26,974 nucleotides of DNA from Macrostomum lignano. Its lineage: Eukaryota. The position numbers were made by a program, and so were the translations under genes. The notes beneath the pieces were generated by a model that saw nothing but the letters and a program-made list of their open reading frames with translations, searched no databases and was not told the origin of the DNA. Numbering within the stretch: the stretch's first letter is position 1; every line of letters starts with the position of its first letter. Shown here in pieces: positions 19-20,300 of the stretch. The stretch is taken from assembly GCA_002269645.1 (NCBI GenBank), contig NIVC01000960.1, positions 1 to 26,974 of the forward strand, read 5' to 3'.

Positions 19-31
19 AAGGTCTAATTAT
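19..31 (+). repeat. Target-site duplication, left copy (AAGGTCTAATTAT, 13 bp)
   Basis: Identical to 5782-5794. The first AAG is ambiguous with the element tail, so the TSD is 10-13 bp. Confidence 0.93.
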
Positions 32-283
32 GCACGCGAAGGTGTATTCAGCACGCCAGTGAAGTATGAGACAGACCAGGCCTAAGGGCTACGGTCTGCG
101 ATGCTTCACGCCTGCCCCTATATTCAGCAGGTCAAGGCTGGAGAGGGAGGTCTGCACCCGCTATTTGCCACTGGCAGCCGCAGACCCCCCCCCCTCACGC
201 TGTTTCACAAGTCGACCCAGGGTACTCGTCCCCGCGTGTGTTCAAGGCAGACCCTAGGGCTGCTGGACAGACTGGGCTCCGAC
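32..283 (+). ncRNA. HDV-like self-cleaving ribozyme at the LINE 5' end (predicted cleavage between T31 and G32)
   Basis: P1 GCACGCG(32-38)/CGCGTGT(233-239) with G32.U239 wobble; P2 CCCA(216-219)/TGGG(273-276), extended by GTCG(211-214)/CGAC(280-283); P3 GGG(220-222)/CCC(230-232); L3 TACTCGT(223-229); P1.1 AC(224-225)/GT(240-241); P4 GGCAG(246-250)/CTGCT(260-264) capped by CC-CTAG-GG; J4/2 CAGAC with putative catalytic C268; long hairpin-rich J1/2 (39-210). Confidence 0.85.
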
Positions 284-504
284 GCTGGCGACCCATCCAG
301 TGGCTTCGGCCGAATTTGGGTATGCGGGTCTGGCTTGCCAGCCTGCAGGCCGTGGTACTGCTTAACGTACCCCCTAATGCCTAAGGTGTTTGACCGTGCC
401 GATGGGCTGGAAGGCCGGGGGGTTGTCCGGTCGCTAGCGGTCCTTTTCTTTTTCTTCTTTCCTCTTTCTTTTGTGACTCAGCTCACTCCTTCCCGCTTTC
501 AGCT

Positions 505-1969
505 ATGGCGTCATCCGCCTCTTTAACCCCCGCTGAAGCCGGGCCCCGGCAACTCCGGCCGGTGACTCTGGCACCAGCGCCGCCCCACCGGGGGCAGATG
601 GGCTTGCCGCCGGCTCGGCTGGTGACATGCCCGCACGCGCAACCGGGCCCTCCGCTGAAGCCCGACGCACCCGCAACCAACGCCGCAACGAGCGGCGACG
701 GCGACTACGGGGTACTGCGGGCCGGCCACCGGCGGAAGGGGAACCTAGGGAGGGCGAGGCTGCTGTTGGGCCGAAAGGAACCACAGCAACCCCTGCCCCC
801 AGGATACAACCCCCGCTGGTGAGCCACCCAGTATACCTGCTACAAGCGCGGCCGGGCCTTCGGGAACCGCCGCCACCAACTACGCCTCAAAGGTCAAGCT
901 CCAACCGGCGGTCATCGTCTTCGGGGAAGAGCAGGACCTCACGGCCGACGAGCTCGACAGTGCCTGGCGCACCATCGATGCTGCGCTCATCGACCAGCTC
1001 CTGGCGGGCCGCCCTGTGAGCGTGGTCAAGTCTGCCAAGACCGACGGCTGCATCTTCATCTGGTGCAGCTCGGAGGAGAGCAGCCGCAATCTACGCGAGC
1101 TTCTGCCAAAGCTGAACTGGCCCAAGAAGCTCGGCAAGCTCGTCTTCGCCAGCGAGGGCGAACGACAGAAGACCCAGCGCTTTCGCGTCTGGATCCCGGC
1201 CGGCAGTGCCATTAAGTCCGGAGATCAGCTTAGGCAAATATTGCTAAAGCTGCACCCCGACCTTAAGGTCAACGGGCTCCTACACCACGCCACTTCCCGC
1301 AAGGAGAAGGGGGCTACGGTGATCCTAGGGCTCTCTGATGACTGGGCTAAGCGCTTGCCGCCTAAGTCCACAATTCATATTGGTCTGACTCAGCTGACCA
1401 TCCTCCGTTGCGAGGAGCGGAAAGCTGATGAAGCCAAGAATGCCAAAGCTTCCGAAACCGGAACTGGGGCCCAGGCTCCTCCGGCAAAGAAGCCGAGGCA
1501 AACGGCCGATCCTATGCCCGGTAAGGCAGTTCGCGCTGCTGAAACCGGAAATCGCAATCGCAGACCCGCCAGGAGCACCCGGAGGTCCGGCCTGATCCAG
1601 CGCGCGCTGGACCAGGCCAAGAACCTTCGTGCGCATCGTGAGCGGGCCCGCGCTTCTCGCGCTCCACCCCAACAGCCAGAAGGCCAGACTCTAAGCGGGG
1701 AGGCTCCGACCGACTGGTTCGAGTCTGTGACTCACCAGGAGGCTGGCGCCACCCGCATCGACCTGACCGACGAGGCAGAGGGGACGGGCAGTGACAGCAC
1801 CGAAGCACGCAGGAGAGGCGACGGTAACGTCCACGCTGGGCTCACGTCCGCGGAGGACTCCACAGCCACCCTAACTGCTGAGGACGCTGAAACTCCCATG
1901 GAGGTCTGCGGGTCACCCACCACTGAAAAGGAGGAGGATGACCTGCTCAACGATTCCCCAACTGCGTGA
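505..1969 (+). pseudogene. LINE ORF1 (LOA-type, DUF4780-like core), apparently split by two -1 frameshifts near 544-547 and 796-800
   Basis: The frame of the 1016..1969 ORF is open from 749: ...TNYASKVKLQPAVIVFGEEQDLTADELDSAWRTIDAALIDQLLAGRPVSVVKS...FRVWIP. The basic segment ARRTRNQRRNERRRRLRG is in the -1 frame (open 537-1019). The ATG at 505 has good Kozak context in a third frame. One extra C in each of two C-runs gives a ~488-aa ORF. The DUF4780 resemblance is recalled, not searched. Confidence 0.7.
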
Positions 1970-1971
1970 TA

Positions 1972-4900
1972 ATGATCAGCAACCAGGGAATCCATTGCCT
2001 GCAGATTAATCTGCAGCACTGCGTCGCAGCCTCGGTCAACCTTATGCGTTACGCCGAGCTCGACAAGCCGGGGCTCATCCTCGTCCAGGAACCCTGGACT
2101 CTCAGAGGTAAGCCTCAAAACGCCCCTGCTGGCTACAATTGTTTTTATACTTACCCTCGCGAGGCCAACCAGCCTCCCAGAGCTTGCATCTTTGCGAGCA
2201 AAACGCTCAGTGCGTGGCTCAGATCGGACCTGTCCAACAGGGACATCTGCGTCATCCAATCCGAGGACCTTCTTCCTGGGAAGACCACCCTCATTGCCTC
2301 GGTTTACCTACCAGGCGATGCTGCGGTCGTCCCCAGAGCCCTCGCTACGCTGGTAGAGCTCTGCTCTGCCAAAAACTACGAGCTCATGGTTGCCGGCGAC
2401 ATCAACGCCCACCACACTCACTGGGGCAGCACTGGCATTAATCAGAGAGGCGAAGACCTCCTAGCCTACGTTGCCTCTACGACCCTCGAGTTCTGCAACT
2501 CTGGGTCCACCCCTACCTTTGACAACGGACGGTGGTCGGAGGTGATCGACGCTACGCTCGCAACGCCCAGACTCTACCAGAGTATTGGGGCGTGGCGGGT
2601 GCTTCCAGTGTCCTCACTATCGGATCACAAGTTCATCTCCTTCAACCTAATGGCCGCGCGTAGCGCAACTCGTGTTATGTGGAGACGGAACGCCAGAAAT
2701 ACGGATTGGGAAACCTTCGGGCTCGCCCTGAAGGAATTCCATCGGTCTCCTGGCCAACCATCCACGATCACGTCGTGCCGAGAGGCGGATGAGTGCGCGA
2801 CTGTTTTGACAGAGACGCTAACCGCCGCCTTTGAGGCGTCCTGCCCTTTAAAAGCCTATAAAGGGAAAAAATCGGCGCCGTGGTGGAATCCCGAGCTCGG
2901 CAACCTCCGTCGCAGGGCTAAGAGACTCCACCGCAGAGCAACTAAAACTAAGAGCCCTGCAGACCAAACCGCCTATCATGAAGCAATTCATGAGTTTAAA
3001 AGGCAGGTTAGGAATGCAAAGGCTCAAAAATGGCGACAATACTGTGAGGAGCTAGAGGGCTCACGCCCCACCTCCAGAGTTGTGAAAGCGCTCACGCTGG
3101 ACAAAATGTCTAAGCTCTCCTCGGTCAAACGCACCGACGGTACGTCCACGGACAACCCAGGGGAAACGCTTGATGTAATGCTCACTGCGTTTTTCCCTAA
3201 CGAGCCAGCTAACCAGACCACTCCGGATCACTCGGAGGGAGGTCACGCGCTGGCTGCATCTATCATCACGGAGGACCGCATTGTGAGAGCGGCAAATTCC
3301 TTCAAGCCTTTCAAAGCCCCAGGACCCGACGGCATTGTACCGGCCCTTCTAAGAGAGGCGGTTAAATGCCCAGGCTTCCTGCGCAAACTTTGCAGCCTTC
3401 TTCGGGCATGCATCACGCTTGGTTATGTCCCGCAGGCATGGACCGAGGCAAAGGTGATCTTTATCCCTAAGCCAGGCCGCCCGGACTACCATTCTATCAA
3501 ATCCTTCAGACCGATCAGCTTGACCTCCTCCCTGGTCAAGCTGATGGAGAGACTGGTGCTTTGGCGCCTTCTCTCTGTTGAGCTGAAGAACAAACCTCTC
3601 AGCGAGAACCAGCACGCTTTTCGGGCGGGTCGCTCCACTGAAAGCGCGCTGCACGTCCTGGTCGATAAACTCGAGAAGGCCGTGCTTGGTAGTGGCTTTG
3701 CTCTGGGGATCTTCCTGGACATCATTGGCGCCTTCGATAACGTCCTCTTTGAGGCGTTCCGAAGAGCTCTTTGTGAGAGGCTAACGCACTCACATCTCAC
3801 CAGATGAATCATGTACATGATCAGCCATCGCACGGCCACCGCCAGTCTGCTGGGCTACCAGAGGACGGTCCCCGTCTGCAAAGGTAGCCCGCAAGGTGGG
3901 GTGCTGTCTCCAGTTCTCTGGAATATGGTCATCGATGAGCTCCTCCGGGATGTTCGGCCTGACCCCATTCTGAAAGTTGGATATGCGGACGATGTCACCG
4001 CGGTGGCATCTGGTCCGTCCCCTGATACCCTCAGGGACCTTCTTCAGAACTTCATCTACGCTGCTGAGCAATGGGCGGACCGCTGTGGTTTAAGGCTCTC
4101 TGAGACTAAGACCGCAGCGATCATGTTCACCAGCAGGACCAAGTGGCAGATTCGGCCGCTCACGCTTTACGGAAGGGAAATCCCCTTCTGCAAGCAGACT
4201 AAATGTCTGGGTATTACCCTGGACCACAGGCTGAACTGGTCTCCCCACGTTCAAACAAAAGCCAAAAAGGCCTTCGCAGTCCTCGCGCAATTGCGCAGGG
4301 CCGTCGGCACCACCTGGGGGCTCACCCCCAAGCGCCTCTGGTGGATCTACACTGCAATGGTTAGGCCCGCTATCTCGTATGGCGGCCTGATCTGGGCTAG
4401 CGCCCTGCAGATAAAGACCTGTCTAGAGGCTCTCAGGAGAGCGCAAGGGCGCGCTTGTCGCACGATCATGAGCGCCCCTCCGTCTGCTCCTTACGATGGC
4501 CTCAACGCCTTCCTCAACATTCCTCCGCTGGACATCTTTGTCCGCAGGGAAGCGGCTAAGACTGCCCGCCGTCTAGCTGACGCTGGCATTCGAATCCAGC
4601 CCCATAGGGCCATGGCTAAGCGCAAGCTTCTGCCCCACGCTGACCTCTGCCTCAAGGACTTGAGAGACAGCGGCGGGCTCCACGTCCTATCTGACGGCGA
4701 ACCCCGCACTCTCAACCTCTTTCAGCGCTACAAGGTCACCATCCCCTCTAGGGATGCTGCCAATGACCACTGGAATTTCCAGGAGGTCCATTGCTACACG
4801 GACGGATCCATCAAAGACGGTCGCGCCGGCTTTGGGGTCTGCATCATCATCAACGGCCGCGTAATTGCCACGCATGCCCAGCACACTGGTAGACTCTCCA

Positions 4901-5676
4901 CAGTCTTCCAGAACGAAGTCCTTGCCATCAGCTCTTGCGCTGCAGAGCTAAACGCCAAGGTTACGAGAGGAAAGACTATTGTCATCCACTCCGACAGCCA
5001 AGCGGCCTTACAGGCCCTTTGCCACACCACAACGAACTCCCGGACAGTCGCCGACTGCGCCCGGCAGCTCAACCTCCTGGCCAGAAGCAATACTGTCAGG
5101 CTGAAGTGGATCCCAGGGCACGCAGGGTTTCCGGGGAACGAGCTGGCAGACACCCTCGCCAAGAGGGGCGGCTCTGGCTCTTTTTTCGGCCCTGCCCCCC
5201 TGGTCCCTATGCCCTTGACAGTCATCAATCGTCAGATCGACGACTGGGCTGACTCCCTCCACAGGGACAGATGGGCGGGCACCCAAAACTGCCGGCAATC
5301 TCGTGCCGCGGTTCCTTGCCCGTCTCACAGGCTCAGAAACATCCTTCTGAACCAGAATCGGAAGGATATTCGAGCCCTTGTCATGACCCTTACCGGCCAT
5401 GGCTACCTCGCCAGGCACTGCTTCCTCCGAGGCGACCTCGAGAGCGAAATTTGCCCCTTTTGCGAGTGCGACAATGAAGATGCTCAGCACTTTGTCTGTC
5501 ACTGCCCTTTCTTTAATAGAGACCGGCTACGCTACCTCGGGCCGAACCCGTCCATTGACGAGGTTTGCCAGCCCGACAGCATCCCACGGCTCATCCAGTT
5601 CCTTCGGGCGACTAGACGAGCCAGTTTCTTCCCAACGGAAGATCACGCTGCAGGACGGACCGGCGGACCACCCTGA
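1972..5676 (+). pseudogene. LINE ORF2 (AP endonuclease - reverse transcriptase - RNase H - CCHC knuckle), interrupted by one in-frame TGA at 3805-3807
   Basis: APE: QINLQH, VQEPW, SVYLP, GDINAHH, IDAT, SDH. RT: KAPGPDG, FRPISL, QHAFR, FLDIIGAFD, PQGGVLSP, YADD, LGITLD. RNase H: YTDGS, QNEVLAI, HSDSQAAL, WIPGH, NELADTLAK. C-terminus CPFC..EDAQHFVCHC. The 1966..3807 and 3811..5676 ORFs are in the same frame. Confidence 0.95.
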
Positions 5677-5717
5677 CCGGCCCCACGCCTCTGCCTGTCT
5701 GCGGGCCTTCAGGGGCT

Positions 5718-5784
5718 AGCGGAATGGGCGACCCTCGCCTCCCCGCTGTGTCTACGGACCACCCTGCAGCTAAGTCAAGTCAAG
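5718..5784 (+). other. LINE 3' end: GC-rich stem-loop (5718-5747) and (AAGTC)n tail (5772-5784)
   Basis: AGCGG(5718-22)/CCGCT(5743-47) and GGGCGA(5726-31)/TCGCCT(5735-40) close a CCC loop; tail reads TAAGTCAAGTCAAG. Confidence 0.6.
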
Positions 5785-5794
5785 GTCTAATTAT
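5782..5794 (+). repeat. Target-site duplication, right copy (AAGGTCTAATTAT)
   Basis: Identical to 19-31; directly follows the AAGTCAAGTC tail. Confidence 0.93.
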
Positions 5795-5919
5795 AGCTGA
5801 CATTGCTTTGCTCTTTGAGCGAGCTTTGTTCAAGGCTATTCTATTGCTATTCTGAATTAGCAGTGGGGACTGGCATTATCTCCGCTCCTAGCTCTCTGTA
5901 TGCATTGTTCATGTACTGT

Positions 5920-6250
5920 CCTCTCCCCTCTCTTCTCTCAGCTCCCCCATCTTCTCCCTCCCCTCTCCTCTCTCCATCTCTTCTCTATTCTCTCCTCTCC
6001 CCTCTCCACTCTCCGCTCTCCACTCTCTCTTCTCCGCTCTCTCCTCTCCGCTCTCCCCTCTCCACTCTCCCCATCCTCTCTCTTCCTTCTCCTCTCTTCC
6101 ATCTTCTCTCCTCCATCTCCTCTCCCCATCTTATCTCTCCCCTTCTTCTTCCTCATGTCCTCTCTCCCCTCTCTTCTCCTCCCTATCTTCTTCACTCCCC
6201 CCTCCTCTCCCCCTTTCACCTTTTTAAAGTGCAACCTCCTTTTCTCCTTT
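5920..6250. repeat. CT-rich low-complexity polypyrimidine tract
   Basis: Almost exclusively C/T on the + strand; source of spurious S/L/P-rich ORFs. Confidence 0.9.
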
Positions 6251-6548
6251 CTGTATCTCTTGCTATATTAGTGTTTATATTCTTGTTGACATTCACTAAT
6301 CTGAAACACACCATACGCAACATGTCGTTAGGGAGCTACTCTTTGTCATCTTTTTACTAGTTCACTACTTGAAATTGGTTTACAATGCAATATTTGCGTA
6401 TTTCTTTCAAATTCAAATTTGCTTCGTTTATTACTTTCAAGTATCAAAACAAGAGAATCATTGTTAAAATGGCATTTTTAGAAAAATATGAGTCACTACA
6501 ACTCTCACACAAAATACTACAGAACACAGAAACTATGAGTCACTATTC

Positions 6549-7400
6549 TTAGAATCCCAATACCTATTCTTAGAATCTCGATATCTATTCTTATAATCCC
6601 AATACCTATTCTTAGAATCTCGATATCTATTCCTAGAATCCCAATACCTATTCTTAGATTACCGATACTTGTTAAAATCCTGATCCATATTCTTAGAATC
6701 CTGATCCTTATTCTTAGACCTGATCCTTATTCTTAGAATCTCTATACCATTCTATAGAATCCCGATCCTTATTCTTGGAATCCCGATACCTATTTTTAGA
6801 ATCCCAATCCTTATTCTTAGAATCCCGATCCTTATTCTTTGAATCCCGATCCTTATTCTTAGAATCCCGATACCTATTTTTAGAATCCCGATCCTTATTC
6901 TTAGAATCCCGATACCTATTCTTAGAATCCCGATTCTTATTTTTAGAATCCCGATACCTATTCTTAGAATCTCGATCCTTATTTTTAGAATCCCGATACC
7001 TATTCTTAGAATCCCGATCCTTATTCTTAGAATCCCGATACCTATTCTTAGAATCCCGATCCATATTCTCAGAATCCCGATCCATATTCTTAGAATCCCG
7101 ATCCATATTCTCAGAATCCCGATCCATATTCTCAGAATCCCGATCCATATTCTTAGAATCTCGATACCTATTCTTAGAATCCCGATCCTTATTCTTAGAA
7201 TCCCGATCCATATTCTTAGAATCTCTATACCATTCTTAGAAGCTGGATACCTATTCTTAGAATCCCGATCCTTATTCTTAGAATCCCGATTCTTATTCTT
7301 AGAATCCCAACCCTCAAAATCAAAAATCTATTTTTAGAATCCTGATCACTGTTAATCAATCCCAACTACCGATCCCAATTCTTAGAATCAATCAATCAAT
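6549..7400. repeat. 21-bp minisatellite (TAGAATCCCGAT[AC/CC]CT/TTATTCT-like), roughly 35-40 copies, degenerate at the edges
   Basis: 7-aa periodic ORFs (MDRDSKN / FLESRYL) reflect the 21-nt unit, e.g. TAGAATCCCGATACCTATTCT. Confidence 0.95.
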
Positions 7401-7418
7401 CATTCAATCACTTCTCAG

Positions 7419-7757
7419 GTAAGTGCGCTGTGATCAAGACCAGCACCAGACAGACCTACTTCTTGCCCGTCATCGGTTTGGTTCCGCCTGAGGAGCTGAA
7501 ACCAGCCGATCAGGTCGGCGTTAACAAAGACTCGTTTCTAATCTTGGAAAAGCTGCCAGCCGAATACGATTCCCGAGTCAAAGCTATGGAAGTTGACGAG
7601 AGACCAACGGAGCAATACAGCGATATTGGCGGTTTAGATAAACAAATCCAAGAACTAATTGAAGCCGTCGTGCTTCCAATGACTCATAAGGAGAGATTTA
7701 AGTCGATCGGGATTCAACCGCCAAAGGGCGTGCTGTTGTATGGCCCGCCGGGTACTG
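7419..7757 (+). CDS. PSMC3: 26S proteasome regulatory ATPase subunit 6A (Rpt5), internal exon (first exon in window; 5' exons absent)
   Basis: Acceptor TTCTCAG|GT AAG TGC; (G)[21 protein letters not shown]...[32 protein letters not shown]...[10 protein letters not shown](G); donor G|GTGAGT; length 339 = 2+336+1. Confidence 0.96.
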
Positions 7758-7844
7758 GTGAGTCAGGGAGAAAATATATTGTGAAAAACACTATGAGCCT
7801 ATAAGGGTTCACAAAGTTAATCGCCTTTAAATTTCCATTGGGAA

Positions 7845-8680
7845 AAATAGCCCCTGAATCTCAAATGGAGAAAATCGCCTCTGAATCCCAGATGGAGAAA
7901 ATCCCTCTGAATCTCAGATGGAGAAAATCGCCTCTGAATCTCAGTTAAGGAAAATCCCCTCTGAATCTCAATTGAGGAAAATCGCCTCTGAATCTCAGAT
8001 GAGGAAAATCCCCTCTGAATCTCAGTTGAGGAAAATGGCCTCTGAATCTCAGTTGAGGAAAATCACCTCTGAATCTCAGTTGAGGAAAATCACCTCTGAA
8101 TCTCAGTTAGGGAAAATCCGTCTGAATCTCAGTTAGGGAAAATCCCTCTGAATCTCAGTTGAGGAAAATCACCTCTGAATCTCAGTTAGGGAAAATCCCT
8201 CTGAATCTCAGATGAGGAAAATCACCTCTGAATCTCAGTTAGGGAAAATCCCTCTGAATCTCAGATGAGGAAAATCACCTCTGAATCTCAGTTGAGGAAA
8301 ATCACCTCTGAATCTCAGATGAGGAAAATGGCCTCTGAATCTCAGTTGAGGAAAATCACCTCTGAATCTCAGTTAGGGAAAATCCCTCTGAATCTCAGAT
8401 GAGGAAAATCCCTCTGAATCTCAGTTAGGGAAAATCCCTCTGAATCTCAGATGAGGAAAATCCCTCTGAATCTCAGATGAGGAAAATCACCTCTGAATCT
8501 CAGTTGAGGAAAATCACCTCTGAATCTCAGTTGAGGAAAATCACCCTGAATCTCAGTTGAGGAAAATCACCTCTGAATCTCAGTTAGGGAAAATCCGTCT
8601 GAATCTCAGTTAGGGAAAATCCCTCTGAATCTCAGATGAGGAAAATGGCCTCTGAATCTCAGTTGGGCAAAATCACCTGA
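7845..8680. repeat. 26-27-bp intronic minisatellite (AAAATCACCTCTGAATCTCAGTTGAGG), ~31 copies
   Basis: 9-aa periodic ORF (KIASESQLR); fills PSMC3 intron 7758-8758. Confidence 0.95.
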
Positions 8681-8718
8681 GAAACAACCCAAGGATTAAG
8701 TTACTGTTAAACACCTAA

Positions 8719-9722
<1,004 letters not shown>

Positions 9723-9816
9723 TAAGAAAGACAAAAAAGAGAATCGGCGCATACACACAGATAACACAAACAGATCTCAGATGCCTTGCCCTTCAATTGT
9801 ATCTCCAACCTTTCAG

Positions 9817-10155
9817 GTGATCGCAGCCACCAATCGAGTTGACATCCTCGACCCCGCCCTGCTCCGTTCGAGCCGACTGGATCGAAAAATCGAATTCCCA
9901 GCCCCGAACGAAGAAGCCAGAGCCAGGATTATGCAAATCCATTCGCGCAAAATGAACGTCAGATCCGATGTCAATTTTGACGAGTTGGCCAGGTGCACAG
10001 ATGATTTCAATGGCGCTCAGTGCAAAGCGGTCTGCGTTGAGGCTGGCATGCTGGCGCTGAGGCGTGGCGCCACTAGCGTCTCGCACGAAGACTTTATGGA
10101 CGCCATACTTGAGGTTCAGGCTAAGAAAAAGAGCAGCCTGAACTATTATGCTTGA
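9817..10155 (+). CDS. PSMC3: PSMC3/Rpt5 terminal exon
   Basis: Acceptor TTTCAG|GTG; [28 protein letters not shown]...[12 protein letters not shown]...[15 protein letters not shown]; TGA stop. Confidence 0.96.
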
Positions 10156-10176
10156 GATGGTTTGATTGACTACTGT

Positions 10177-10182
10177 AATAAA
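10177..10182 (+). terminator. Putative polyadenylation signal of PSMC3
   Basis: AATAAA about 21 nt after the stop codon. Confidence 0.65.
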
Positions 10183-11760
10183 ACTTGCGTCTCGAATGTG
10201 TTTAGTGTGCTAACAGTGTTCACTGGGGGTTGAGCAAGAATGCATCTATAACCTTACTGTACAAGCACCTGTGTTGCCGTCTAAATCAATGCATATTCCT
10301 GGTATTTTCTTTTTTGAATAATCTCCAACTCTTATCTCACCGAGTCACCGTCTCTCGTTCAAATCTCTTCCAATGTCTCTATAGTTTCGAATCACACTTT
10401 CATCTATTTTGTCACACCTTTTCCACTCTTTAAAGTCAGTCCTATCTTATTGGTTAGTTTCCTATTCAACGTATTGAGTATTATTTTTCACAATCAATAT
10501 TCGTACTATATGCATATATTCGTATACGCTGCCCTATACTAACTGTTGATTGCTACTTACAGTAGGATAAAACGCGCTAAAACTCTTTCAGTTGCAGCTC
10601 AGTTTATAATCCCGATAAATAGGAAGCAATAAAAACTTGCATATCTAGTATATCCTCTATTTTACTTATAGTAGTAGTTTAAGCAAAAGGTTATTCAGAC
10701 ATCGGTTAGTGATTTTTCAGTGTCTAGCATTTTTTGATTTTGTTAGTGTTTTACTTTTTTATCATTCAGTTCCGTAACTTGCTATACAACCTACTAAAAT
10801 GTGTCCACTAACTATACTGTATTTGTTATGACTTTAAATAACTTGAATAAACTTGATTTCAATTTAATAGCTCTATTTCAGTTGGTTTGAATTCAAATAA
10901 ATTTCTTGTTCTCTTTCAATCTTCGTTCCACCTCTATCTTAAAATTTTAGAAAACAAAGCTTTTATTAAAAGTTAGGTTAGTCTTTAATATAAGAGTTAG
11001 AAGTGAACTTATAATGCAAAGTTTTATAAATTTATAAATTAGTATTTTACTGATGAAAATCACAAAACGCATGCTCTAGTCTGGTAAAAAAATGAAAAGT
11101 CCAGGATATATGCATCAACCAGTAAGAATTATAGTAAACAGCAAATAAACTCATAAGGCAGAAGAAGCAAGTGTTAAAAAGTTAACATGCTCATACAATT
11201 AATTATTGACATTGAAATGTTATGATATTCTAGTATTTTTTCTGTTACATAAATACAAAGTATTGTTTAATGCCCTTTAATGGATTAGATTTCAGCATAG
11301 ATATTGTAAGTTCAATTACAACCAATATAATTATATTTAGCTTGGTAATTGGTATATAAGTAATTTGTTAAGCATGTCTGACTTCAAAATGATTTTACCT
11401 TTTACAGAGCCAGGTGAGAGAAAGATCGATTAAAAATATAAACTTAAAAATTTCGGAAATTTTAGTGTTTATTTTCATTGAAAACCTAAAGTTTGTTTTT
11501 ATACAAAATTCCATTAGGATATTCGATTTTTTAAAATTAGACTCCTTTTAAAAGAAGAAAAAAGAAAAAAGTAAGAAAGTGTACGATACAGATAAACACT
11601 GCTAAGATTGACAGACTGTTGTGATAATATGTTTATTATTACAAATTTTCGTATGCTCTGTCACTACTAATGCACAGCCAAATATTAAATAGCTATCTAG
11701 TATTTTATCATATTTAAAGTTCCTGTGTCTTAGATGTTACAGCAAACAAAAAGCAAACTG

Positions 11761-12360
11761 TTAGGACTTGTGAGAGTTGCAACACCATTGAAATGAGTCA
11801 GCCTGGCTAAGCTTCTTCCTGTTGGAGACACTTGTCCAAGAGCATTGGCAGCAGTATGCTGTGTGCTGCGGCGAATTAGATAGCTTCTTACTCAAGTTTT
11901 GCCTGTCAGGCATGAAGTTCCGAAAGAACATATAGTTTACAGACGATACCCAATGTTGACCGCGGAAAATTAAAACTTGAAAGTCGCACTTCATGCAATG
12001 CATATTGTCACAGGCTTTCTCCTGCATTAGGCTACAATGCCCATACTCCATCTCCTTTGGACCAGCCAGAAAAATAGACCTACACTTCAAAGTAGGTGTT
12101 TCATTCGAGTAGTCTTTGGCGGTCAGCGGTGCTTCAGTCGAAGATTTCTGTGGATGTGACTTGCTTTTCTTGCTATCAGATTCGATTTCGTCAAGAGATT
12201 TGAGCAGGTCGCTAGCATCGCTAGTTTTTGTTGCAGTTGTAGAGTTCACCTTAGTTGAATTGTTGGTCTTCACAGAGTTCACAGGAGTCAAAGTGGACTT
12301 TTTTTGCAATGAGCCTTCAATTTGATCCAGCAGATCGTCAACGTCATCTATTCCAGCCAT
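11761..12360 (-). CDS. CFAP418: Cilia- and flagella-associated protein 418 (C8orf37; retinal-maintenance domain), single-exon CDS, 199 aa (alternative start at 12375)
   Basis: N-terminal DDVDDLLDQIE; C-terminal Cys-rich domain ACDNMHCMKCDFQV...W...NYMFFRNFMPD...AYCCQCSW...W.C..H, matching the C8orf37 pattern as recalled; AATAAA on the - strand at 11632-11637. Confidence 0.88.
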   Translation of the reverse strand: MAGIDDVDDLLDQIEGSLQKKSTLTPVNSVKTNNSTKVNSTTATKTSDASDLLKSLDEIESDSKKSKSHPQKSSTEAPLTAKDYSNETPTLKCRSIFLAGPKEMEYGHCSLMQEKACDNMHCMKCDFQVLIFRGQHWVSSVNYMFFRNFMPDRQNLSKKLSNSPQHTAYCCQCSWTSVSNRKKLSQADSFQWCCNSHKS

Positions 12361-13930
12361 TTCAGCTTCTTTCATATAACTAATAGAAAAAATATGCCTG
12401 AAGTAAGTACGTTGAAATGCTGACAAAGCAAAAGATTTATTTATGCTGAAGGTTTATTTTTTCATACTATAATTACAAATAAATAAAAACACTAAATAGA
12501 AAATACGACGAAAAATATTTTATTTATTTTTATGAAATAACTACAAAACTTTGTTATTCTTTAACAAAACGTTATAAAGTACGGAATAAGTTGAAACCTA
12601 AATTGCTAGTATTCCGCATTGGGACGAAAGTTACAAATTGCTTAGTCGCTTAAGAGCCCCTGACTCGAAGAAAGATCGATTTTTATTATAAATTCATATT
12701 AATTTATTGCGTTCATTAAATTTGACTTTCTTAATTAGTAGCTAATCCTAAATTAGTCTAAAAACTGAAGATTTTTGATTGCACGAGGAGATATTTTTAA
12801 TATCTTCTTGATATTTTGTACCTGTAATACAAAACCAACATTCACGTATTACGTTGCTAGTATCCTTGTAGAATCCTCAATTAAATAAATGAAAGATTTT
12901 TTAATTGCACTAAAATATTGATTTTTGTGAATGGAACAGTAGGACAGTAGTAGCAAAAATCCTGAATATATATTTACTACAAAAACACCGTAAAGCACCG
13001 GAGATAAATTTGTCTTAACTTCAAGATTAACAAATTTCTGCATAATTATAAGTTGAATTTCGGGATTGCATGAGTTACAGATATCTTGCAAAGCTTTGAA
13101 ACTCACATTCAAACAAGTGAACAAAAATATTGTTACATTTTTTTTTCTAGGATAAACTCAAGATGTATTGAACCAGATAGATTGCGTTGACTGTACTGTA
13201 CCTGCGTGGAAATACAAGTAAAGTTTCGGAACAAAAAACACAAGTCATGGTTGGTTTTACTTCTAAAATTTAAGCGATAAATTATAAGTTCAAACAATTA
13301 TTTTCGATTACACTATTGAACTAGAAAGGTTTTTTACTGAAATTGAAACGGAGTGTTAACCAAATCGATTTCATTTATAATAATTTAAAAATAAAATACA
13401 AAGTATTTGACTTAATGCAATCCAGAATAATAACACAAAAAGTGATCATATTATATTAACCTTGAAACTTTATTACAACACAAAAATGGCATAACAGCCA
13501 CAGAAAGGAATTAGAAGTAGAGATAAGCGGAAATACATCGATGCATGCCCACAACAGGAATTGATTTCTGGTCGAATATATTTATGCCTCATATTTACAA
13601 ATCAGAATGTAGATATTTATAAACTTTATAGACTACTTGTACTATAAAGCGTGAGCGCAACTATACCGAGGATCAAAGCAGATTTAATGTTTAAGGCAGC
13701 AAGGTAAGATTCAGCGATAGAAGCTTACAATTTATTATTTAAATTCGCGCGAAAAAAAATCGAAATCTTATGACATCTCGTTTTCAGGGTTGCTAAAAGC
13801 AAACTAGGCCTTATTACAGTTAATGTGGTGACAAAATTAAGACATTGGAATAAGAGCGTTTGAATAGGCATAAAACATTTAGCTCGTATAATTGATCCGT
13901 AATTTAATGTCACGTAGAAAAAATGTAGTA

Positions 13931-14267
13931 CCTCTCAGGCATTCGATCAATAATCACAAAGCGAATAACGTATCCTCTGGTTGGTCGTCTCGGTGCTTAA
14001 GCGTACGCGAACGATCCGACGAAGAAGCAGCGGTGCCAGCGCTAGTATAGTTCTGTTGCTGTTGCTGTTGAAGAAACAAGTTGAAATCCGAGCTAGAAAC
14101 GCCTGACGTAGCTGTCTGGGATGCCGCTCCCCCCGCTGTTGCTATGCCGGTGCGCTGAGCCAGGCCGTTCTGCAGGCCGGTCGCCAGCTGCTGGCCACCG
14201 TCAGTGGCGCCTGCGTAGGCGGCAGCCCCGCTCATGCCAGCTCGGTTGCGATCGAATGCCTGAGAGG
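13931..14267. repeat. Perfect 18-bp inverted repeat (arms 13931-13948 and 14250-14267) bracketing the TOM1 terminal exon
   Basis: CCTCTCAGGCATTCGATC is the exact reverse complement of GATCGAATGCCTGAGAGG. Confidence 0.95.
13954..14259 (-). CDS. TOM1: TOM1-family terminal exon 5
   Basis: Acceptor CCTCTCAG|GCA TTC; ...GVSSSDFNLFLQ...EDTLFAL* matches the TOM1/TOM1L2 C-terminal (E/D)FDxFL and LFAL* signatures; AATAAA on the - strand at 13731-13736. Confidence 0.9.
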   Translation of the reverse strand, partial: AFDRNRAGMSGAAAYAGATDGGQQLATGLQNGLAQRTGIATAGGAASQTATSGVSSSDFNLFLQQQQQQNYTSAGTAASSSDRSRTLKHRDDQPEDTLFAL

Positions 14268-14499
14268 CAGGTAGATTCAAGTAAAAAGCATCAGATATGA
14301 GATTACTTGCTACTATTAAAGAGCTTGAAAATCCCCGGGTTATTCCAAAAAAATCACGACAGTTTCAGCTGAAGGATGTAGGGTGCTCATTGCTCATACT
14401 AAAGCCTTCAGGAAAATCTGGCACGGTGCCCCAACAACTGACTGAGGATCTGGAAGGCTCCGTGGAGCATTCCAGTCTCTAGGAGGATACTCACGAGTA

Positions 14500-15090
14500 A
14501 GGGCTGGCCCAGGAACTGAGAATCTGGGAGGCTGGCCCAGCAACTGACACTCTTGGAAGTGGCCCAGCAACTGACACTCTTGGAAGTGGCCCAGCAACTG
14601 ACACTCTGGGAGGCTGGCCCAGCAACTGACACTCTGGGAGGCTGGCCCAGCAACTGACACTCTGGGAGGCTGGCCTAGCAACTGACACTCTTGGAAGTGG
14701 CCCAGCAACTGACACTCTGGGAGGCTGGCCCAGCAACTGACACTCTGGGAGGCTGGCCCAGCAACTGACACTCTGGAGGCTGGCCCAGCAACTGACACTC
14801 TGGGAGGCTGGCCTAGCAACTGAGGATCTGGGAGGCTGGCCAAGCAACTGACACTCTTGGAGGCTGGCCAAGCAACTGATGAGATCTGAGAGGCTGGCCC
14901 AGCAACTGATGAGATGTGGGAGGCTGACCCAGCAACTGACACTCTTGGAGGCTGGCCCAGCAACTGACACTCTTGGAGGCTGGCCCAGCAACTGACACTC
15001 TGGGAGGCTGACCCAGCAAACTGACACTCTGGGAGGCTGGCCCAGCAACTGAGGATCTGGGAGGCTGGCCCAGCAACTGAGGATCTGGGA
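14500..15090. repeat. 28-bp intronic minisatellite (GGGAGGCTGGCCCAGCAACTGACACTCT), ~21 copies
   Basis: 28-nt spacing of CCAGCAACTG; in TOM1 intron 14260-15145. Confidence 0.95.
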
Positions 15091-15145
15091 GGGCTTACTA
15101 AAGAATAAAACAATGCATCTATGCTCAGCTAGCCGCTAACAGTAC

Positions 15146-15428
15146 CTGCCGACTGCTAGCAAACATGTCAAATTCATCAGACTGTTCCAATGGCTGCTGC
15201 TGTTGCACAGATTGCGAACCGGCTTGGGTAATCTGGAGGCCAGCCAACTGCTGCCCAATGGATGACGGCTTCGGCTCGTCTGGTGTAGAGAAATCAATCA
15301 GCGGTGCCGCCTGCGGCTCGGGAGGCTGCGATGAAGCTGGAACCGGAGGCGGCTGCTGCAGAGCATCAGGCCGATTGAACATGGGATTAAATGAAGGCTG
15401 CTGTTGTTGTTGTTGCACTTGTGGTTGC
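15146..15428 (-). CDS. TOM1: TOM1-family exon 4 (Q/P-rich; LIDF and DEFDMFA motifs)
   Basis: Acceptor TTCCGCAG|G; ...PLIDFS...QQLAGLQI...SDEFDMFASSRQ; donor CAG|GTACTG; phases consistent. Confidence 0.88.
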
Positions 15429-15584
15429 CTGCGGAATAAATAAAATGAACGAATATTAGCATCAAACAGTACCACGGGAGGTACCTTTTTAAGGTTCATA
15501 TGGATAATTCGAAAGTTACATTTGAATGTCAGTAGACTTTAAACTCAGTGATATTGAAAGTTTCTGTAACTAAAAGACATTTAC

Positions 15585-15935
15585 GGTTGGCCATACTTGA
15601 TGCTTAGTCAAAATTCAGAGTTGCTCATAAATTATGGGTTGGTCATGCGTAGTAGTAGGTCATACTTAGGAGCTGGTCATATTAAAGGGTTGATCATAAT
15701 GAGGAGTTGGTCATAAACTATGGTTTGCTCATGTTTTGGAGTTGGTCATACTCAAGAGTTGGTCATACTTAACAGTAAGTCATGCATAGGAGTAATTGGT
15801 CATACTTAGGAGTAATTGGTCATACTTAGGAGTAATTGGTCATGCATAGGAGTAATTGGTCATGCTTAGGAGTTGGTCATAAATTACGGGTTGCTCATAT
15901 TTTAGAGTCGGTCATAGTTAGGCGTTGGTCATAAC
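15585..15935. repeat. Degenerate ~17-22-bp intronic minisatellite (core TTGGTCATA; e.g. CATACTTAGGAGTAATTGGT)
   Basis: Recurrent TTGGTCAT/TTGCTCAT core; in TOM1 intron 15429-15967. Confidence 0.85.
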
Positions 15936-15967
15936 TTGATAAGCTATCAAACTTAAAGAAAACAAAC

Positions 15968-16197
15968 CTATTCGCCTCTCGATAACGTTCGAACCGATCG
16001 AATCGCAGAAATCCGTTGTTTAAATCGTCATTGATACGCAGCAGCTCTCCGACAACTTCGTCGTTGGCTATGACGTCCACTAGTTCAACAATTCTCTGCT
16101 GCATCTGCCGGTTAGTGCGATTTAACTCTTGCAGCAGTGACAGGTCCTCCGGTTGCACTGAGTCTGGTGACAGCTCGTTCAGCATCTCGTTGAATAC
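15968..16197 (-). CDS. TOM1: TOM1-family exon 3 (GAT domain)
   Basis: Acceptor ATCAG|GTA; VFNEML.EL.P.....EDLSLLQELNRTNRQMQQRIVEL...ELLRINDDLNNGFLRFDRFERYR; donor AG|GTTTGT. Confidence 0.93.
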
Positions 16198-16240
16198 CTG
16201 ATTGTGTGATGGGGCAAAATGCAATTGTATACAATCGTAA

Positions 16241-16483
16241 TCATGATGATGATGCTCATATAGTCAAAATAATAACAACCATGATGATCATATAGTCACA
16301 ATACTCATAACCATAATGATGATCATATAGTCACAATTCTCATAACCATGATGATGATCATATAGTCACAATACTCACAATCATGATGATGTTCATATAG
16401 TCACAATACTCATAACCATGATGATGATCATATAGTCACAGTACTCATAACCATGATGATGTTCATATAGTCACAATACTCAT
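16241..16483. repeat. 35-bp intronic minisatellite (CATGATGATGATCATATAGTCACAATACTCATAAC), ~7 copies
   Basis: CATATAGTCACA at 16289, 16324, 16359, 16394, 16429, 16464 (35-nt period); TOM1 intron 16198-16610. Confidence 0.95.
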
Positions 16484-16610
16484 TTTATTAAAATGCTCCA
16501 ATAAAAGTCACAAGACTTAAAAAAAAGTAATTCGTACTGTTAATACTCCTGCTCCTAAAGAAGATACTAATAGACTCACTATGCTCATAACAAAACTTTC
16601 GGTTAATCAC

Positions 16611-17103
16611 CTTAACATTTCCAAGCACAATGTCCAATTCTGAGCGCAGCTTAGCCAACTGTTCAGGACTAGGCGTTGCGATTGGTCTCGATCTTTGACC
16701 GGACACCTGTTGATGCTGCTGATGAGGCTGAGTAGAGTGATGCTGCTGCTGCTGTTTAGACTGCTGCTGCGGACGTCGATTTGGCGATACGGGGCCAGAA
16801 TCGGCGCCAAAGTCGTTGCTAGGGAGAACAGCTATCGAATCGTGATTAGTAGAAGCGGCAGCTGCAGAGGCTGCGGATCTGGCTGGGGTGTTGATCGGCG
16901 CCATGGAGTCCAGATCGGTCATAGGAAATTCGACGCCTTTGCTGCGCAATTCCTCAACCAGACGCTCGACTTCGCGCAGTTCTGGCCGACCGCGAAACGC
17001 ATCCGACCAGGCTTGGAGCAGGCCGAGCACTCGGTCCTGGATCTGCTGCGGCGGCTCGTTCTTGGGGCTGATGAGGCGGACCAGCTCGTCCAGGAAGTCG
17101 CGT
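16611..17103 (-). CDS. TOM1: TOM1-family exon 2 (VHS end, linker, GAT start)
   Basis: Acceptor TTCCCAG|A CGC GAC; RDFLDELVRLISPKNEPP..IQDRVLGLLQAWSDAF...GVEFPMTDLDSMAPINTP...EQLAKLRSELDIVLGNVK; donor AAG|GTGATT. Confidence 0.92.
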
Positions 17104-17174
17104 CTGGGAACGGAGATTTCAGAGGGGCGGCGAATGGGGTGATTTTAATCCTATCTGACGGCTAAGTAATGCAG

Positions 17175-17737
<563 letters not shown>

Positions 17738-17785
17738 TTATTTACCAAAAGATCAGCCAAATGGATCAACAAAAATAAAACTCAC

Positions 17786-18075
17786 TTAGCAACCAGCAGG
17801 TGAAATCTGAATCCGCAATTCTTGACGCAAGTCTCCAGCACACTCAGACTGTACTGGACAGCACTGTTGCTGCGCCCAGCCGATGTTGTTAATCGTCGAC
17901 GAAGCGCTCGAAGAGCATCGCGAGGCCCCTCTTCTAATTCGTTAACAGCATCGCATACGGCCATTAGCAGAGCCCAATCCTCTCCTGATTGGGCCCCATC
18001 GGTGGCCCGTTCAACCAACTGACCAACTGGTGTAGAAAATGGATTGCCTTGCAGAATGTTTGACACAGTCTGCAT
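17786..18075 (-). CDS. TOM1: TOM1/TOM1L2-family protein, coding exon 1 (VHS domain N-part)
   Basis: [27 protein letters not shown]...EDWAL...CD..NE.EEGPRDA..A...[15 protein letters not shown]; donor AA|GTGAG. The five exons total 1602 nt (533 aa + stop). TOM1 versus TOM1L2 orthology is not resolvable by eye. Confidence 0.93.
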
Positions 18076-18889: not shown

Positions 18890-19182
18890 TCTGCATCTGC
18901 CTCTCTGTCTCCTTTTGCCCCTTGGATCCTTTGAAATTTCTATCTTCTCTTCTGTTTCCTCTCTTCTCTCTCGTCTCTTGTCTCTTCCTTCTCTTCTCAC
19001 TCCTTACTCTACCTTTTCAACACTTCCTTCATCTACTCCTCTCCCCTTTCTCATCTCTTCTCTCAACTGTCTCCTCTCCTCTCTCCACTCTCTCCTCTCA
19101 TCTCTTTCCTCACCTCTTTTCTCTCTTATCTCTTCCCATTACTCTCTGCTTGCTCCTCTCTCTTTCTGTCTCTGTCTCTCTT

Positions 19183-19257
<75 letters not shown>
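18890..19257. repeat. CT-rich low-complexity tract ending in (TCTGTC)n and (TC)n
   Basis: Pure (TC)n at about 19200-19257, abutting the Penelope-like fragment. Confidence 0.93.
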
Positions 19258-19259
<2 letters not shown>

Positions 19260-20262: not shown

Positions 20263-20300
20263 GGCCTGACGAAGAGCCCAGAGGCTCGAAACCGGTAGCC
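20263..20300 (+). ncRNA. Minimal type I hammerhead ribozyme (Penelope-type)
   Basis: Stem I GGC/GCC; core CTGACGA(20266-72)+A; stem II GAGCC-CAGA-GGCTC; GAAA(20288-91); palindromic stem III ACCGGT; GUA triplet with cleavage after A20297. Confidence 0.85.

What the first reader, a model, noticed from the sequence alone, without database searches (positions are those of the whole stretch)
32..283. HDV-like ribozyme whose cleavage site is exactly the TSD/element junction of a LOA-like LINE
Seen: every element of the nested double pseudoknot is present in the correct order (P1 with a G.U wobble at +1, P2 with extension, 3-bp P3, L3 U-A-C-U-C-G-U, P1.1, P4, J4/2 C-A-G-A-C). The predicted cleavage point (T31|G32) coincides with the end of the left TSD, which was found independently. 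P1.1 is AC/GU rather than the usual CC/GG, a compensatory pair. J1/2 is a ~170-nt insert of hairpins (59-67/101-109, 72-77/93-98, 111-115/127-131, 149-155/180-186). Established: HDV-like ribozymes process the 5' ends of R2, RTE, LOA/Baggins and L1Tc/ingi retrotransposons. Inference: this family releases its RNA from read-through transcripts; whether this family or variant is described cannot be judged here.
Basis: partly seen in the sequence, partly recalled or inferred. Interest (0 to 1): 0.88.

Follow-up and report, generated by a model that had tools for sequence, protein, structure and literature searches.

The report
Self-cleaving ribozyme heading a flatworm LINE
The first 252 bases of a dead jumping gene (a LINE retrotransposon, most likely from the flatworm Macrostomum lignano) fold into an HDV-like self-cleaving RNA whose predicted cut site is exactly the element's first base, a well-known way for such elements to trim their own RNA, seen here in a host where I found no earlier report.

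Summary
An exact 13-bp target-site duplication (19-31 and 5782-5794) puts the element's 5' end at G32, the predicted cleavage site.

A strict HDV-type descriptor hits only position 32 in the window (both strands). It gave no hit in 11.5 Mb of dinucleotide-shuffled element sequence.

A closer relative (L011, 84% aa identity in ORF2) keeps the P3-L3-P3' core at 12/13 bases, against about 42-55% in the J1/2 segment and the downstream 5' UTR. Its helices are also kept.

More distant relatives (L004, L005, 36% aa identity) carry compact HDV-like ribozymes that Rfam detects weakly. In L005 the 13-bp TSD ends exactly at the ribozyme's first base; in L004 the junction is ambiguous by one base.

Weak points:
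- No Rfam hit for the window itself.
- No P1 covariation from close copies, because none could be fetched.
- J4/2 has one extra base and is poorly conserved in L011.
- The second P1.1 pair is lost in L011.
- The "LOA" clade assignment is untested.
- This copy is dead (ORF2 stop, ORF1 frame break).

Verdict: a real HDV-like 5' processing ribozyme with a 172-nt structured J1/2 domain. It is a new member of a known kind, of modest interest.

The parts
19..31 (+). Left target-site duplication, AAGGTCTAATTAT
   Evidence: Exact 13-mer repeated at 5782-5794, with only two copies in the window. The flanking bases differ on both sides.
32..5781 (+). Full-length but dead non-LTR retrotransposon (5' UTR, ORF1, ORF2 with APE-RT-RNase H, short 3' UTR, (AAGTC)2 tail)
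   Evidence: GC 56-64% against about 31-46% in most of the flank, apart from the tandem-repeat blocks. Pfam finds Exo_endo_phos_2, RVT_1 and RNase_H. Bounded by the TSD. 96% aa identity to a Macrostomum lignano UniRef protein.
32..283 (+). HDV-like ribozyme; predicted cleavage between T31 and G32
32..38 (+). P1 5' strand, GCACGCG
   Evidence: 7 bp with 233-239, first pair G32.U239. Duplex energy -10.4 kcal/mol.
39..210 (+). J1/2 peripheral domain, a closed multi-branched fold
   Evidence: Folded as 39-213: MFE -70.2 kcal/mol, z = -3.33, 0 of 200 shuffles fold as well. The closing stem 42-52/199-208 brings P1 and P2 together. The hairpin with its UGCC-NCU-GGCA tip is kept in L011.
51..56 (+). 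Second copy of the P1 strand (GCACGC), a possible decoy
   Evidence: 6 bp with P1', -9.1 kcal/mol. It is sequestered in the J1/2 fold.
211..219 (+). P2 5' strand including the GUC extension
   Evidence: Pairs with 273-283. The middle extension pair is U-A here, C-G in L011 and U.G in L004/L005.
220..232 (+). P3 (GGG/CCC) with L3 UACUCGU
   Evidence: 12 of 13 bases identical in L011. L3 differs at 1 of 7 positions from the L3 of the Rfam drz-agam-1 consensus as printed.
233..239 (+). P1 3' strand, CGCGUGU
240..241 (+). P1.1 3' strand, GU (pairs with C225 and A224)
   Evidence: Only the C-G pair is conserved in all four sequences.
242..267 (+). P4 hairpin (core 246-253/258-264, closing U242-A267)
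   Evidence: L011 has a perfect 7-bp P4, with G.U changed to G-C at the base.
268..272 (+). J4/2 CAGAC, with putative catalytic C268
   Evidence: The C is conserved in window, L011, L004 and L005. CNRAC is shared with L004/L005 (CUAAC), but L011 reads CGUG.
273..283 (+). P2 3' strand including the GAC extension
   Evidence: P2, P3 and P4 are recovered together in the nested MFE of 32-283.
505..1969 (+). ORF1, broken by a frame change
   Evidence: The start ATG aligns with the ATG of the open 506-aa ORF1 of L011. The window reads 505-822 in one frame and 845-1966 in another.
1966..5676 (+). ORF2 (APE, RT, RNase H, C-terminal Cys/His motif) with an in-frame stop at 3805-3807
5772..5781 (+). 3' tail, AAGTCAAGTC
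5782..5794 (+). Right target-site duplication

Best explanation
Bases 32-283 are the DNA copy of an HDV-like self-cleaving ribozyme. It forms the extreme 5' end of an APE-RT-RNase H LINE family of Macrostomum-type flatworms.

Proposed mechanism:
- When a full-length element is transcribed from any upstream promoter, the nascent RNA folds into the nested double pseudoknot.
- P1 (32-38/233-239) and P2 (211-219/273-283) are held together by a stable 172-nt J1/2 domain and an extended, interrupted P2.
- C268 in J4/2 catalyses attack at the T31/G32 phosphate and removes all upstream host sequence.
- The released RNA starts at G32 with a 5'-OH. It is the template for target-primed reverse transcription, so a full-length new copy begins at G32, directly after the TSD.

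Shown here: the pairings, the junction coincidence, the departure from chance, core conservation, and equivalent ribozymes at equivalent places in relatives.

Inferred: catalysis itself, the role of C268, dependence on read-through transcription, and any role in translation.

This particular copy is a dead element, so its ribozyme may or may not still cleave.
For: 1. All helices are present in canonical order, with G.U at +1.
2. The exact 13-bp TSD ends at T31, which equals the predicted cleavage site.
3. The strict descriptor gives 1 hit in the window at position 32, 0 hits in 2000 shuffles of the element, and 0 of 20000 anchored shuffles.
4. L011 has 84% aa identity in the ORF2 N-half with both ORFs open, and a homologous 5' UTR.
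   - P3-L3-P3' is 12/13 identical, against 55% for J1/2 and 42% for the rest of the UTR.
   - P2, the P2 extension, P3 and P4 all still pair.
   - Changes that keep pairing: U212-A282 becomes C-G, G246.U264 becomes G-C, and an AA/UU co-insertion lengthens P2.
5. Relatives L004 and L005 carry compact HDV-like ribozymes upstream of ORF1. Rfam scores them 31.2-31.9 bits for drz-agam-1 and 32.0-32.2 bits for HDV-F-prausnitzii, E about 0.01-0.02.
   - The L005 TSD (13 bp) ends exactly at the first ribozyme base; in L004 the junction is ambiguous by one base.
   - Against the window they differ by double changes in 3 of 7 P1 pairs and all 3 P3 pairs, and all of these still pair.
   - They share the CNRAC form of J4/2 and the GUC...GRC P2 extension.
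6. The J1/2 domain folds better than all 200 shuffles and closes on itself. This fits the published "pinch" role of structured J1/2 domains with an extended P2 (PMC4908430).
7. Cleavage at the element's 5' end is the published behaviour of R4, Dong, baggins, L1Tc and RTE ribozymes (PMC3774820).
Against: - The window gives no Rfam HDV-family hit at gathering or at E<=10, even when the 3' domain is searched alone.
- A covariance model built only from L004/L005 does not find the window's site. Homology between the two ribozyme lineages is therefore not shown.
- J4/2 has 5 nt instead of the canonical 4. It is the least conserved segment against L011 (4/9 identical), and L011 has no A after the C.
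- The second P1.1 pair is U x U in L011.
- L011's P1' ends in C, so its first pair would be G-C rather than G.U. Its P1 5' strand lies off the contig, so P1 covariation within the family is untested.
- Nested MFE folding does not recover P1. A 6-bp decoy (51-56) and a flank hairpin (30-35/42-47) compete with it.
- Six other loci fetched via ORF2 homologs (L002, L006-L010; 31-42% aa identity) and two loci that do not reach a 5' end (L001, L003) show no HDV-like motif.
- The copy is degenerate.
- The descriptor was designed after seeing the candidate.
Confidence: 0.82

Rival explanations
1. The ribozyme lineage is real, but this copy (or this large-J1/2 variant) no longer cleaves efficiently. 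It would be a fossil of the ribozyme that made its parent RNA, weakened by the extra J4/2 base, a short interrupted P2 and competing pairings.
For: The element is dead: ORF2 has a stop at 3805-3807 and ORF1 changes frame. J4/2 is non-canonical. A decoy P1 strand is almost as stable as P1, -9.1 against -10.4 kcal/mol. Contiguous P2 is only 4 bp.
Against: The insertion itself begins exactly at G32, so the parent RNA was cut or ended there. The catalytic core is the best-conserved part of the UTR. The extra J4/2 C is shared with L004/L005. The forced ribozyme fold plus P2 comes to about -103 kcal/mol, competitive with the nested MFE of -99.4 (rough estimate).
Confidence: 0.25
2. Chance look-alike. 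The GC-rich 5' UTR merely happens to fit an HDV-like topology, and the 5' end at G32 reflects an internal promoter's start site.
For: Loose topology descriptors hit many times in this window. Rfam gives no hit for the window. The independent covariance model fails to find it.
Against: The strict descriptor gives 0 hits in 11.5 Mb of shuffled sequence and 0 of 20000 anchored shuffles. The core is 12/13 conserved against about 42-55% in the J1/2 segment and downstream UTR. Helices are maintained through changes in L011. Relatives have Rfam-detected HDV-like ribozymes at their TSD junctions.
Confidence: 0.04
3. The fold is conserved mainly for another job, such as cap-independent translation initiation, binding of the element's own proteins, or 5' end protection. 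Cleavage would be secondary or absent.
For: HDV-like ribozymes of retrotransposons have been proposed to act like an IRES, and the R2 protein binds a pseudoknot within the R2 ribozyme region (PMC6765202). Further conserved blocks lie downstream in the UTR. The large J1/2 domain is partly conserved.
Against: These roles are additions to cleavage in the published systems, not replacements for it. The TSD-junction coincidence in three insertions (exact in two, ambiguous by one base in L004) is what cleavage predicts.
Confidence: 0.08

Closest known systems
[quoted passage not shown] 2011 and Sanchez-Luque et al. 2011, as cited in PMC3774820 and PMC6765202)
   Same: Sense-strand ribozyme occupying the first bases of the element. 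Cleavage falls at the element's 5' junction. The element is non-site-specific and leaves a TSD.
   Different: The host phylum is a free-living flatworm. The exact LINE clade is undetermined. J1/2 is far longer than in the compact forms, and J4/2 has one extra base.
R2 retrotransposon ribozymes (PMC3774820)
   Same: Double pseudoknot with conserved P3/L3/P1.1. P1 and P1' are separated by 23 to more than 700 nt, P4 is variable, and P2 often carries mismatches. The function is 5' processing of a co-transcript.
   Different: R2 is specific for the rDNA site, and by my own knowledge it carries a restriction-like endonuclease and a single ORF. In R2, cleavage often lies upstream within the 28S gene. 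Here it is exactly at the junction.
drz-Agam-2 type large HDV-like ribozymes (PMC4908430)
   Same: A structured J1/2 (P1.2-like) domain plus an extended P2 that together bring P1 and P2 close.
   Different: The domain here is a multi-branched 172-nt fold rather than a single helix, and P2 is interrupted by bulges. No kinetic data exist for it.
Rfam drz-agam-1 (RF01787) and HDV-F-prausnitzii (RF02682)
   Same: Relatives L004 and L005 match both models over their full length. The window's L3 differs from the drz-agam-1 consensus L3 at 1 of 7 positions.
   Different: All scores are below gathering: 31-32 bits against thresholds of 37 and 44. The window itself gives no hit.
Twister-variant ribozymes at the 5' end of Perere-3 in Schistosoma mansoni (PMC8501958)
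   Same: A flatworm LINE with a 5' self-cleaving ribozyme and a TSD immediately next to the cleavage site.
   Different: A different ribozyme class (twister) and an RTE-clade element. There the TSD supplies one strand of P1, whereas here the whole ribozyme lies inside the element.

Membership tests
HDV-like self-cleaving ribozyme | Nested double pseudoknot in the order P1, J1/2, P2, P3, L3, P3', P1', P1.1, P4, J4/2, P2' | tested here: met
   All helices were verified base by base. The only strict-descriptor hit in the window is at this site.
HDV-like self-cleaving ribozyme | Cleavage 5' of the first P1 nucleotide, a G in a G.U wobble | tested here: met
   G32.U239 in the window, and G.U in L004/L005. 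L011's P1' ends in C and its 5' strand is missing, so the wobble is not confirmed in the closest relative.
HDV-like self-cleaving ribozyme | Conserved L3 nucleotides (U at position 1, C at 3, C-G at 5-6) and a 3-bp P3 | tested here: met
   L3 reads UACUCGU, UUCUCGU, UCCACGU and UUCACGU in the four sequences. The block is 12/13 conserved between window and L011.
HDV-like self-cleaving ribozyme | Catalytic C opening J4/2, followed by N-R-A and then P2' | tested here: inconclusive
   The C is conserved in all four sequences. The window reads CAGA+C and L004/L005 read CUAA+C (one extra base), while L011 reads CGUG with no A.
HDV-like self-cleaving ribozyme | P1.1 of one or two pairs between L3 and the bases after P1' | tested here: met
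   The C-G pair is present in all four. The second pair is A-U, U x U, C-G and U.G respectively. Published ribozymes have one or two such pairs (PMC4908430).
HDV-like self-cleaving ribozyme | Score at or above the gathering threshold of a curated HDV-family covariance model | tested here: not met
   No hit for the window. Relatives score 31-32 bits against thresholds of 37 and 44. This is expected for a 172-nt J1/2 insert, but it remains unmet.
HDV-like self-cleaving ribozyme | Covariation supporting the helices | tested here: inconclusive
   Only four sequences from three lineages were available. All helix cells pair except A x C (P2 insert column, L004/L005). There are double changes in P1 (3 pairs), P3 (3), P2 (1) and the P2 extension (1). 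Homology of the two lineages is unproven, and there is no P1 data from L011.
HDV-like self-cleaving ribozyme | Mg2+-dependent self-scission giving a 5'-OH and a 2',3'-cyclic phosphate | not testable with these tools
   Needs a bench assay.
5'-terminal processing ribozyme of non-LTR retrotransposons | Cleavage site coincides with the 5' junction of full-length insertions | tested here: met
   Window TSD ends at 31 and P1 starts at 32. L005 TSD ends at 3024 and P1 starts at 3025. L004 TSD ends at 1078/1079 and P1 starts at 1079.
5'-terminal processing ribozyme of non-LTR retrotransposons | Element transcribed as part of a longer read-through transcript | not tested
   Only 31 nt of upstream flank lie in the window, and no expression data were available.
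LOA clade of LINEs | ORF2 with APE, RT and RNase H domains, plus a separate ORF1 | tested here: met
   Pfam finds Exo_endo_phos_2, RVT_1 and RNase_H, and ORF1 lies upstream. By my own recollection this layout is shared by the I, Tad, Ingi and Nimb clades, so it is not diagnostic.
LOA clade of LINEs | RT phylogeny groups the element with LOA/Baggins reference elements | not tested
   No reference LINE sequences were available. Named homologs carry only generic labels. ORF1 has no Pfam domain in the window or L011 and DUF4780 in L005.

The most novel reading that the evidence does not exclude
The 172-nt J1/2 domain may be more than a passive clamp. It carries decoy copies of the P1 strand (GCACGC 51-56 and CACGC 197-201 in the window). 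L011 has GCUCGC, which matches its own altered P1'. These could let the RNA switch between a cleaving and a non-cleaving fold, making 5' processing regulated, for example by co-transcriptional timing or by binding of the element's proteins. A milder version of this reading: one HDV-like ribozyme lineage with a conserved AAGUC/P2-extension signature has been inherited vertically across this LINE group in different animals.
Probability: 0.12. Interest if true: 0.6.

Novelty: new member of a known kind. Interest (0 to 1): 0.35.

Why it matters
It adds a free-living flatworm LINE family to the retrotransposons that trim their own 5' end with an HDV-like ribozyme. In schistosomes a twister variant does this job. 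It also gives a natural example of a very large, well-folded J1/2 domain combined with an interrupted, extended P2, and that could be used to test the published "pinch" model. For annotation, the ribozyme marks the true 5' end of full-length copies of this family. It does not change the current understanding of how these elements work.

Tried and rejected
Searches that found nothing for the window's ribozyme:
- Rfam at gathering over the whole window, at E<=10 over 1-500, and at E<=10 over 205-290 alone gave no HDV-family hit.
- A covariance model built from the L004/L005 3' domains did not recover the window's site; best hits had E>1 and lay elsewhere. I therefore do not claim sequence-level homology between the two lineages.

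Attempts to fetch close genomic copies for P1 covariation all failed:
- Exact-protein lookup.
- Metagenome DNA pattern and metagenome protein scan.
- Viral and prokaryotic-genome scans.

Other points:
- A loose topological descriptor gave 45 and 211 hits on the two strands, so I abandoned it as uninformative.
- Other relatives (L001-L003, L006-L010) showed no HDV-like motif by Rfam at E<=1 or by my descriptors. Several of these contigs may lack the 5' end.
- I inspected the L002 5' region by eye for a non-canonical core and found only a simple hairpin.
- MAFFT misaligned the two lineages, so I made the structural alignment by hand and checked it against the sequences.
- I considered reading C272 as part of P2 or P3 and rejected it, because it would break the P3/P1' adjacency.
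- A literature search found no report of ribozymes in Macrostomum LINEs. Ruminski 2011 and Webb 2009 are not held in the library.

Full report
**What is in the window.** The first 5.8 kb is GC-rich (56-64%). Most of the rest is AT-rich and crowded with minisatellites. The GC-rich block is a single non-LTR retrotransposon. Its ORF2 carries an AP-endonuclease domain, a reverse transcriptase split by one in-frame stop at 3805-3807, and RNase H. An ORF1 lies upstream; its start ATG is at 505 and its reading frame changes between about 822 and 845. The C-terminal half of ORF2 is 96% identical to a UniRef protein of the flatworm Macrostomum lignano, which is the likely source. The element is a dead copy.

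**The boundaries.** The 13-mer AAGGTCTAATTAT occurs exactly twice in the window, at 19-31 and 5782-5794. The bases on either side of the two copies differ. The element is therefore 32-5781. It ends in AAGTCAAGTC with no poly(A), and its first base is G32. I established this without reference to any RNA structure.

**The observation.**
- P1: GCACGCG (32-38) with CGCGUGU (233-239), opening with the G32.U239 wobble.
- P3: GGG/CCC, 220-222/230-232.
- L3: UACUCGU.
- P1.1: C225-G240 and A224-U241.
- P4: a hairpin within 242-267.
- J4/2: CAGAC, 268-272.
- P2: CCCA/UGGG (216-219/273-276), continued by G214-C277 and GUC/GAC (211-213/281-283).

The 172-nt J1/2 segment, folded as 39-213, forms a closed multi-branched domain. 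Its MFE is -70.2 kcal/mol with z = -3.33, and none of 200 shuffles fold as well. Nested MFE folding of 32-283 recovers P2, P3 and P4 together but not P1, which is the pseudoknotted helix. Forcing P1, P3 and P4 costs about 5 kcal/mol, roughly what the P2 duplex returns. This energy comparison is rough.

**Is it more than chance?** Topology alone is not enough. A permissive descriptor hits dozens of times in this window. A strict descriptor based on the canonical conserved features finds exactly one site in both strands, at position 32. Those features are G.U first, Watson-Crick P3, L3 = UNCNCGN, P1.1, P2 of at least 4 bp, and J4/2 = CNRA plus at most one base. The strict descriptor found no site in 2000 dinucleotide shuffles of the element (11.5 Mb) and none in 20000 shuffles anchored at +1. 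I wrote the descriptor after seeing the candidate, and it tolerates the extra J4/2 base, so these numbers are somewhat generous. Even so, a hit falling on the single base defined by the TSD is very unlikely to be accidental.

**Curated models.** Rfam gives no HDV-family match for the window at gathering, at E<=10 over 1-500, or at E<=10 over the 3' domain alone. A 172-nt insert in J1/2 and an unmodelled pseudoknot make this unsurprising. It remains a membership criterion that is not met.

**The closest relative with DNA.** Close genomic copies could not be fetched. One metagenome contig, L011, carries an element with 84% aa identity in the ORF2 N-half and 63% in ORF1, and both ORFs are open. 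Its 5' UTR aligns with the window from about base 121 onward, so the contig starts inside J1/2 and lacks the P1 5' strand.

Across this alignment the P3-L3-P3' block is 12/13 identical. J1/2 is 55% identical and the UTR downstream of the ribozyme is 42%. All remaining helices still pair in L011:
- The P2 extension changes U212-A282 to C-G.
- The base pair of P4 changes G.U to G-C, and P4 becomes a perfect 7-bp stem.
- An AA insertion before P3 is matched by UU before P2', lengthening P2.
- The 149-186 hairpin of J1/2 keeps its tip and inner stem, while the outer stem has a different sequence.

**More distant relatives.** Two elements from an ENA assembly (L004, L005; 36% aa identity in the ORF2 N-half) have compact HDV-like ribozymes upstream of ORF1. 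Rfam detects them just below threshold. They score 31.2-31.9 bits for drz-agam-1 (threshold 37) and 32.0-32.2 bits for HDV-F-prausnitzii (threshold 44), with E about 0.01-0.02 in a 30-kb search. Both insertions have 13-bp TSDs. In L005 the left copy ends exactly at the base before the ribozyme's first G. In L004 the junction is ambiguous by one base.

In a hand-made structural alignment that I checked against the sequences, they differ from the window by double changes in three of seven P1 pairs, all three P3 pairs and one P2 pair, and every one of these still pairs. They share two unusual details with the window: J4/2 of the form CNRAC, and a GUC...GRC extension of P2 beyond an internal loop.

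A covariance model built from these two sequences alone does not find the window's site. I therefore treat them as showing the same architecture at the same place, not as proven homologs.

**Weak points.**
- J4/2 is the least conserved segment between window and L011 (4/9). L011 reads CGUG with no adenosine after the C, although L011 looks intact.
- L011's P1' ends in C, which would make its first pair G-C.
- The window has a second copy of the P1 strand at 51-56 that pairs almost as well with P1' (-9.1 against -10.4 kcal/mol). L011 has an internal GCUCGC matching its own altered P1'.
- Six other loci fetched via ORF2 homologs at 31-42% aa identity (L002, L006-L010), and two loci that do not reach a 5' end (L001, L003), show no HDV-like motif. 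Some of these contigs may be 5'-truncated.

**Mechanism.** The best reading is the published one for this class. A full-length element transcribed from an upstream promoter folds co-transcriptionally. The structured J1/2 domain and extended P2 bring P1 and P2 together, as shown experimentally for large HDV-like ribozymes (PMC4908430). C268 then catalyses scission 5' of G32. The released RNA, free of host sequence, is reverse transcribed at a new target, so a full-length copy starts at G32 next to the TSD. Cleavage at the element's 5' end is reported for R4, Dong, baggins, L1Tc and RTE, and separations of P1 and P1' of 23 to more than 700 nt are reported for R2 (PMC3774820). A TSD directly next to a ribozyme cleavage site was used as evidence of in vivo cleavage for the twister variants of Perere-3 in Schistosoma (PMC8501958). 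Catalysis, the identity of the catalytic C and any role in translation are inferred, not shown.

**Clade.** "LOA-like" is not established. The APE-RT-RNase H layout with a separate ORF1 also fits, by my own recollection, the I, Tad, Ingi and Nimb clades. The relative L005 ends in (TAA)n and has a DUF4780 ORF1. I had no reference sequences for a phylogeny.

**Novelty and score.** I found no report of ribozymes in Macrostomum retrotransposons in the held literature. The mechanism, the position, the large J1/2 and the extended P2 all have precedents. This is a new member of a known kind. It is a sound reading by the first-stage reader, useful for annotation and as a natural test case for peripheral-domain effects, but it would not surprise a specialist. 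Interest 0.35.

Noticed in passing
window 5772-5794: The element's 3' tail is (AAGTC)2, and the TSD that follows begins AAGGTC. This microhomology between tail and target would let the nicked target anneal to the RNA 3' end during target-primed reverse transcription. In L005 the (TAA)n tail likewise runs into a TSD starting ATA.
   Followed up: partly
window 51-56 and 197-201; L011 76-81: Extra copies of the P1 5' strand lie inside J1/2. The window has GCACGC (6 bp with P1', -9.1 kcal/mol) and CACGC. L011 has GCUCGC, which matches its own changed P1'. These may be decoy or alternative pairings, or chance.
   Followed up: partly
window 284-504: Blocks of the 5' UTR downstream of the ribozyme are conserved with L011: ACCCATCCAG 291-300, GGCTTCGGCC 302-311 (a UUCG-type hairpin), CTGCAGGCC 343-351 and an 18-nt block GTCCGGTCGCTAGCGGTC 425-442. 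Their function is unknown; they could act in translation or protein binding.
   Followed up: no
window 11764-12426 (-): This ORF has a strong Pfam match to RMP, 'Retinal Maintenance' (PF14996, E = 5.5e-36). It is probably a host gene exon.
   Followed up: partly
window 9664-10152 (+): This ORF has AAA ATPase and AAA_lid_3 matches, so it is a fragment of an AAA+ protein gene. It lies next to a G-rich minisatellite of about 20-nt units at 9027-9800.
   Followed up: no
window 5900-21500: The flank holds many tandem arrays: 21-nt units at 6500-7360, 27-nt at 7819-8680, 28-nt at 14440-15120, 35-nt at 16211-16517, (CTAT)n at 17088-17800, and CT-rich low-complexity tracts at 5900-6200, 18940-19170 and 20680-21470.
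   Followed up: no
L005 3087-3122: The L005/L004 ribozymes allow two alternative J4/2-P2' solutions: a compact one (CUAAC + UGAGG) and a downstream one chosen by the Rfam drz-agam-1 alignment (CUGA + UGAAGAUGG). Only the compact one has a counterpart in the window and in L011.
   Followed up: partly
L004 1079-10292: The TSD-bounded insertion in L004 is about 9.2 kb and contains two sets of LINE ORFs (RT at 2553-4241, then APE-RT-RNase H at 5001-8470). This suggests a tandem or nested pair mobilised or arranged as one unit.
   Followed up: no
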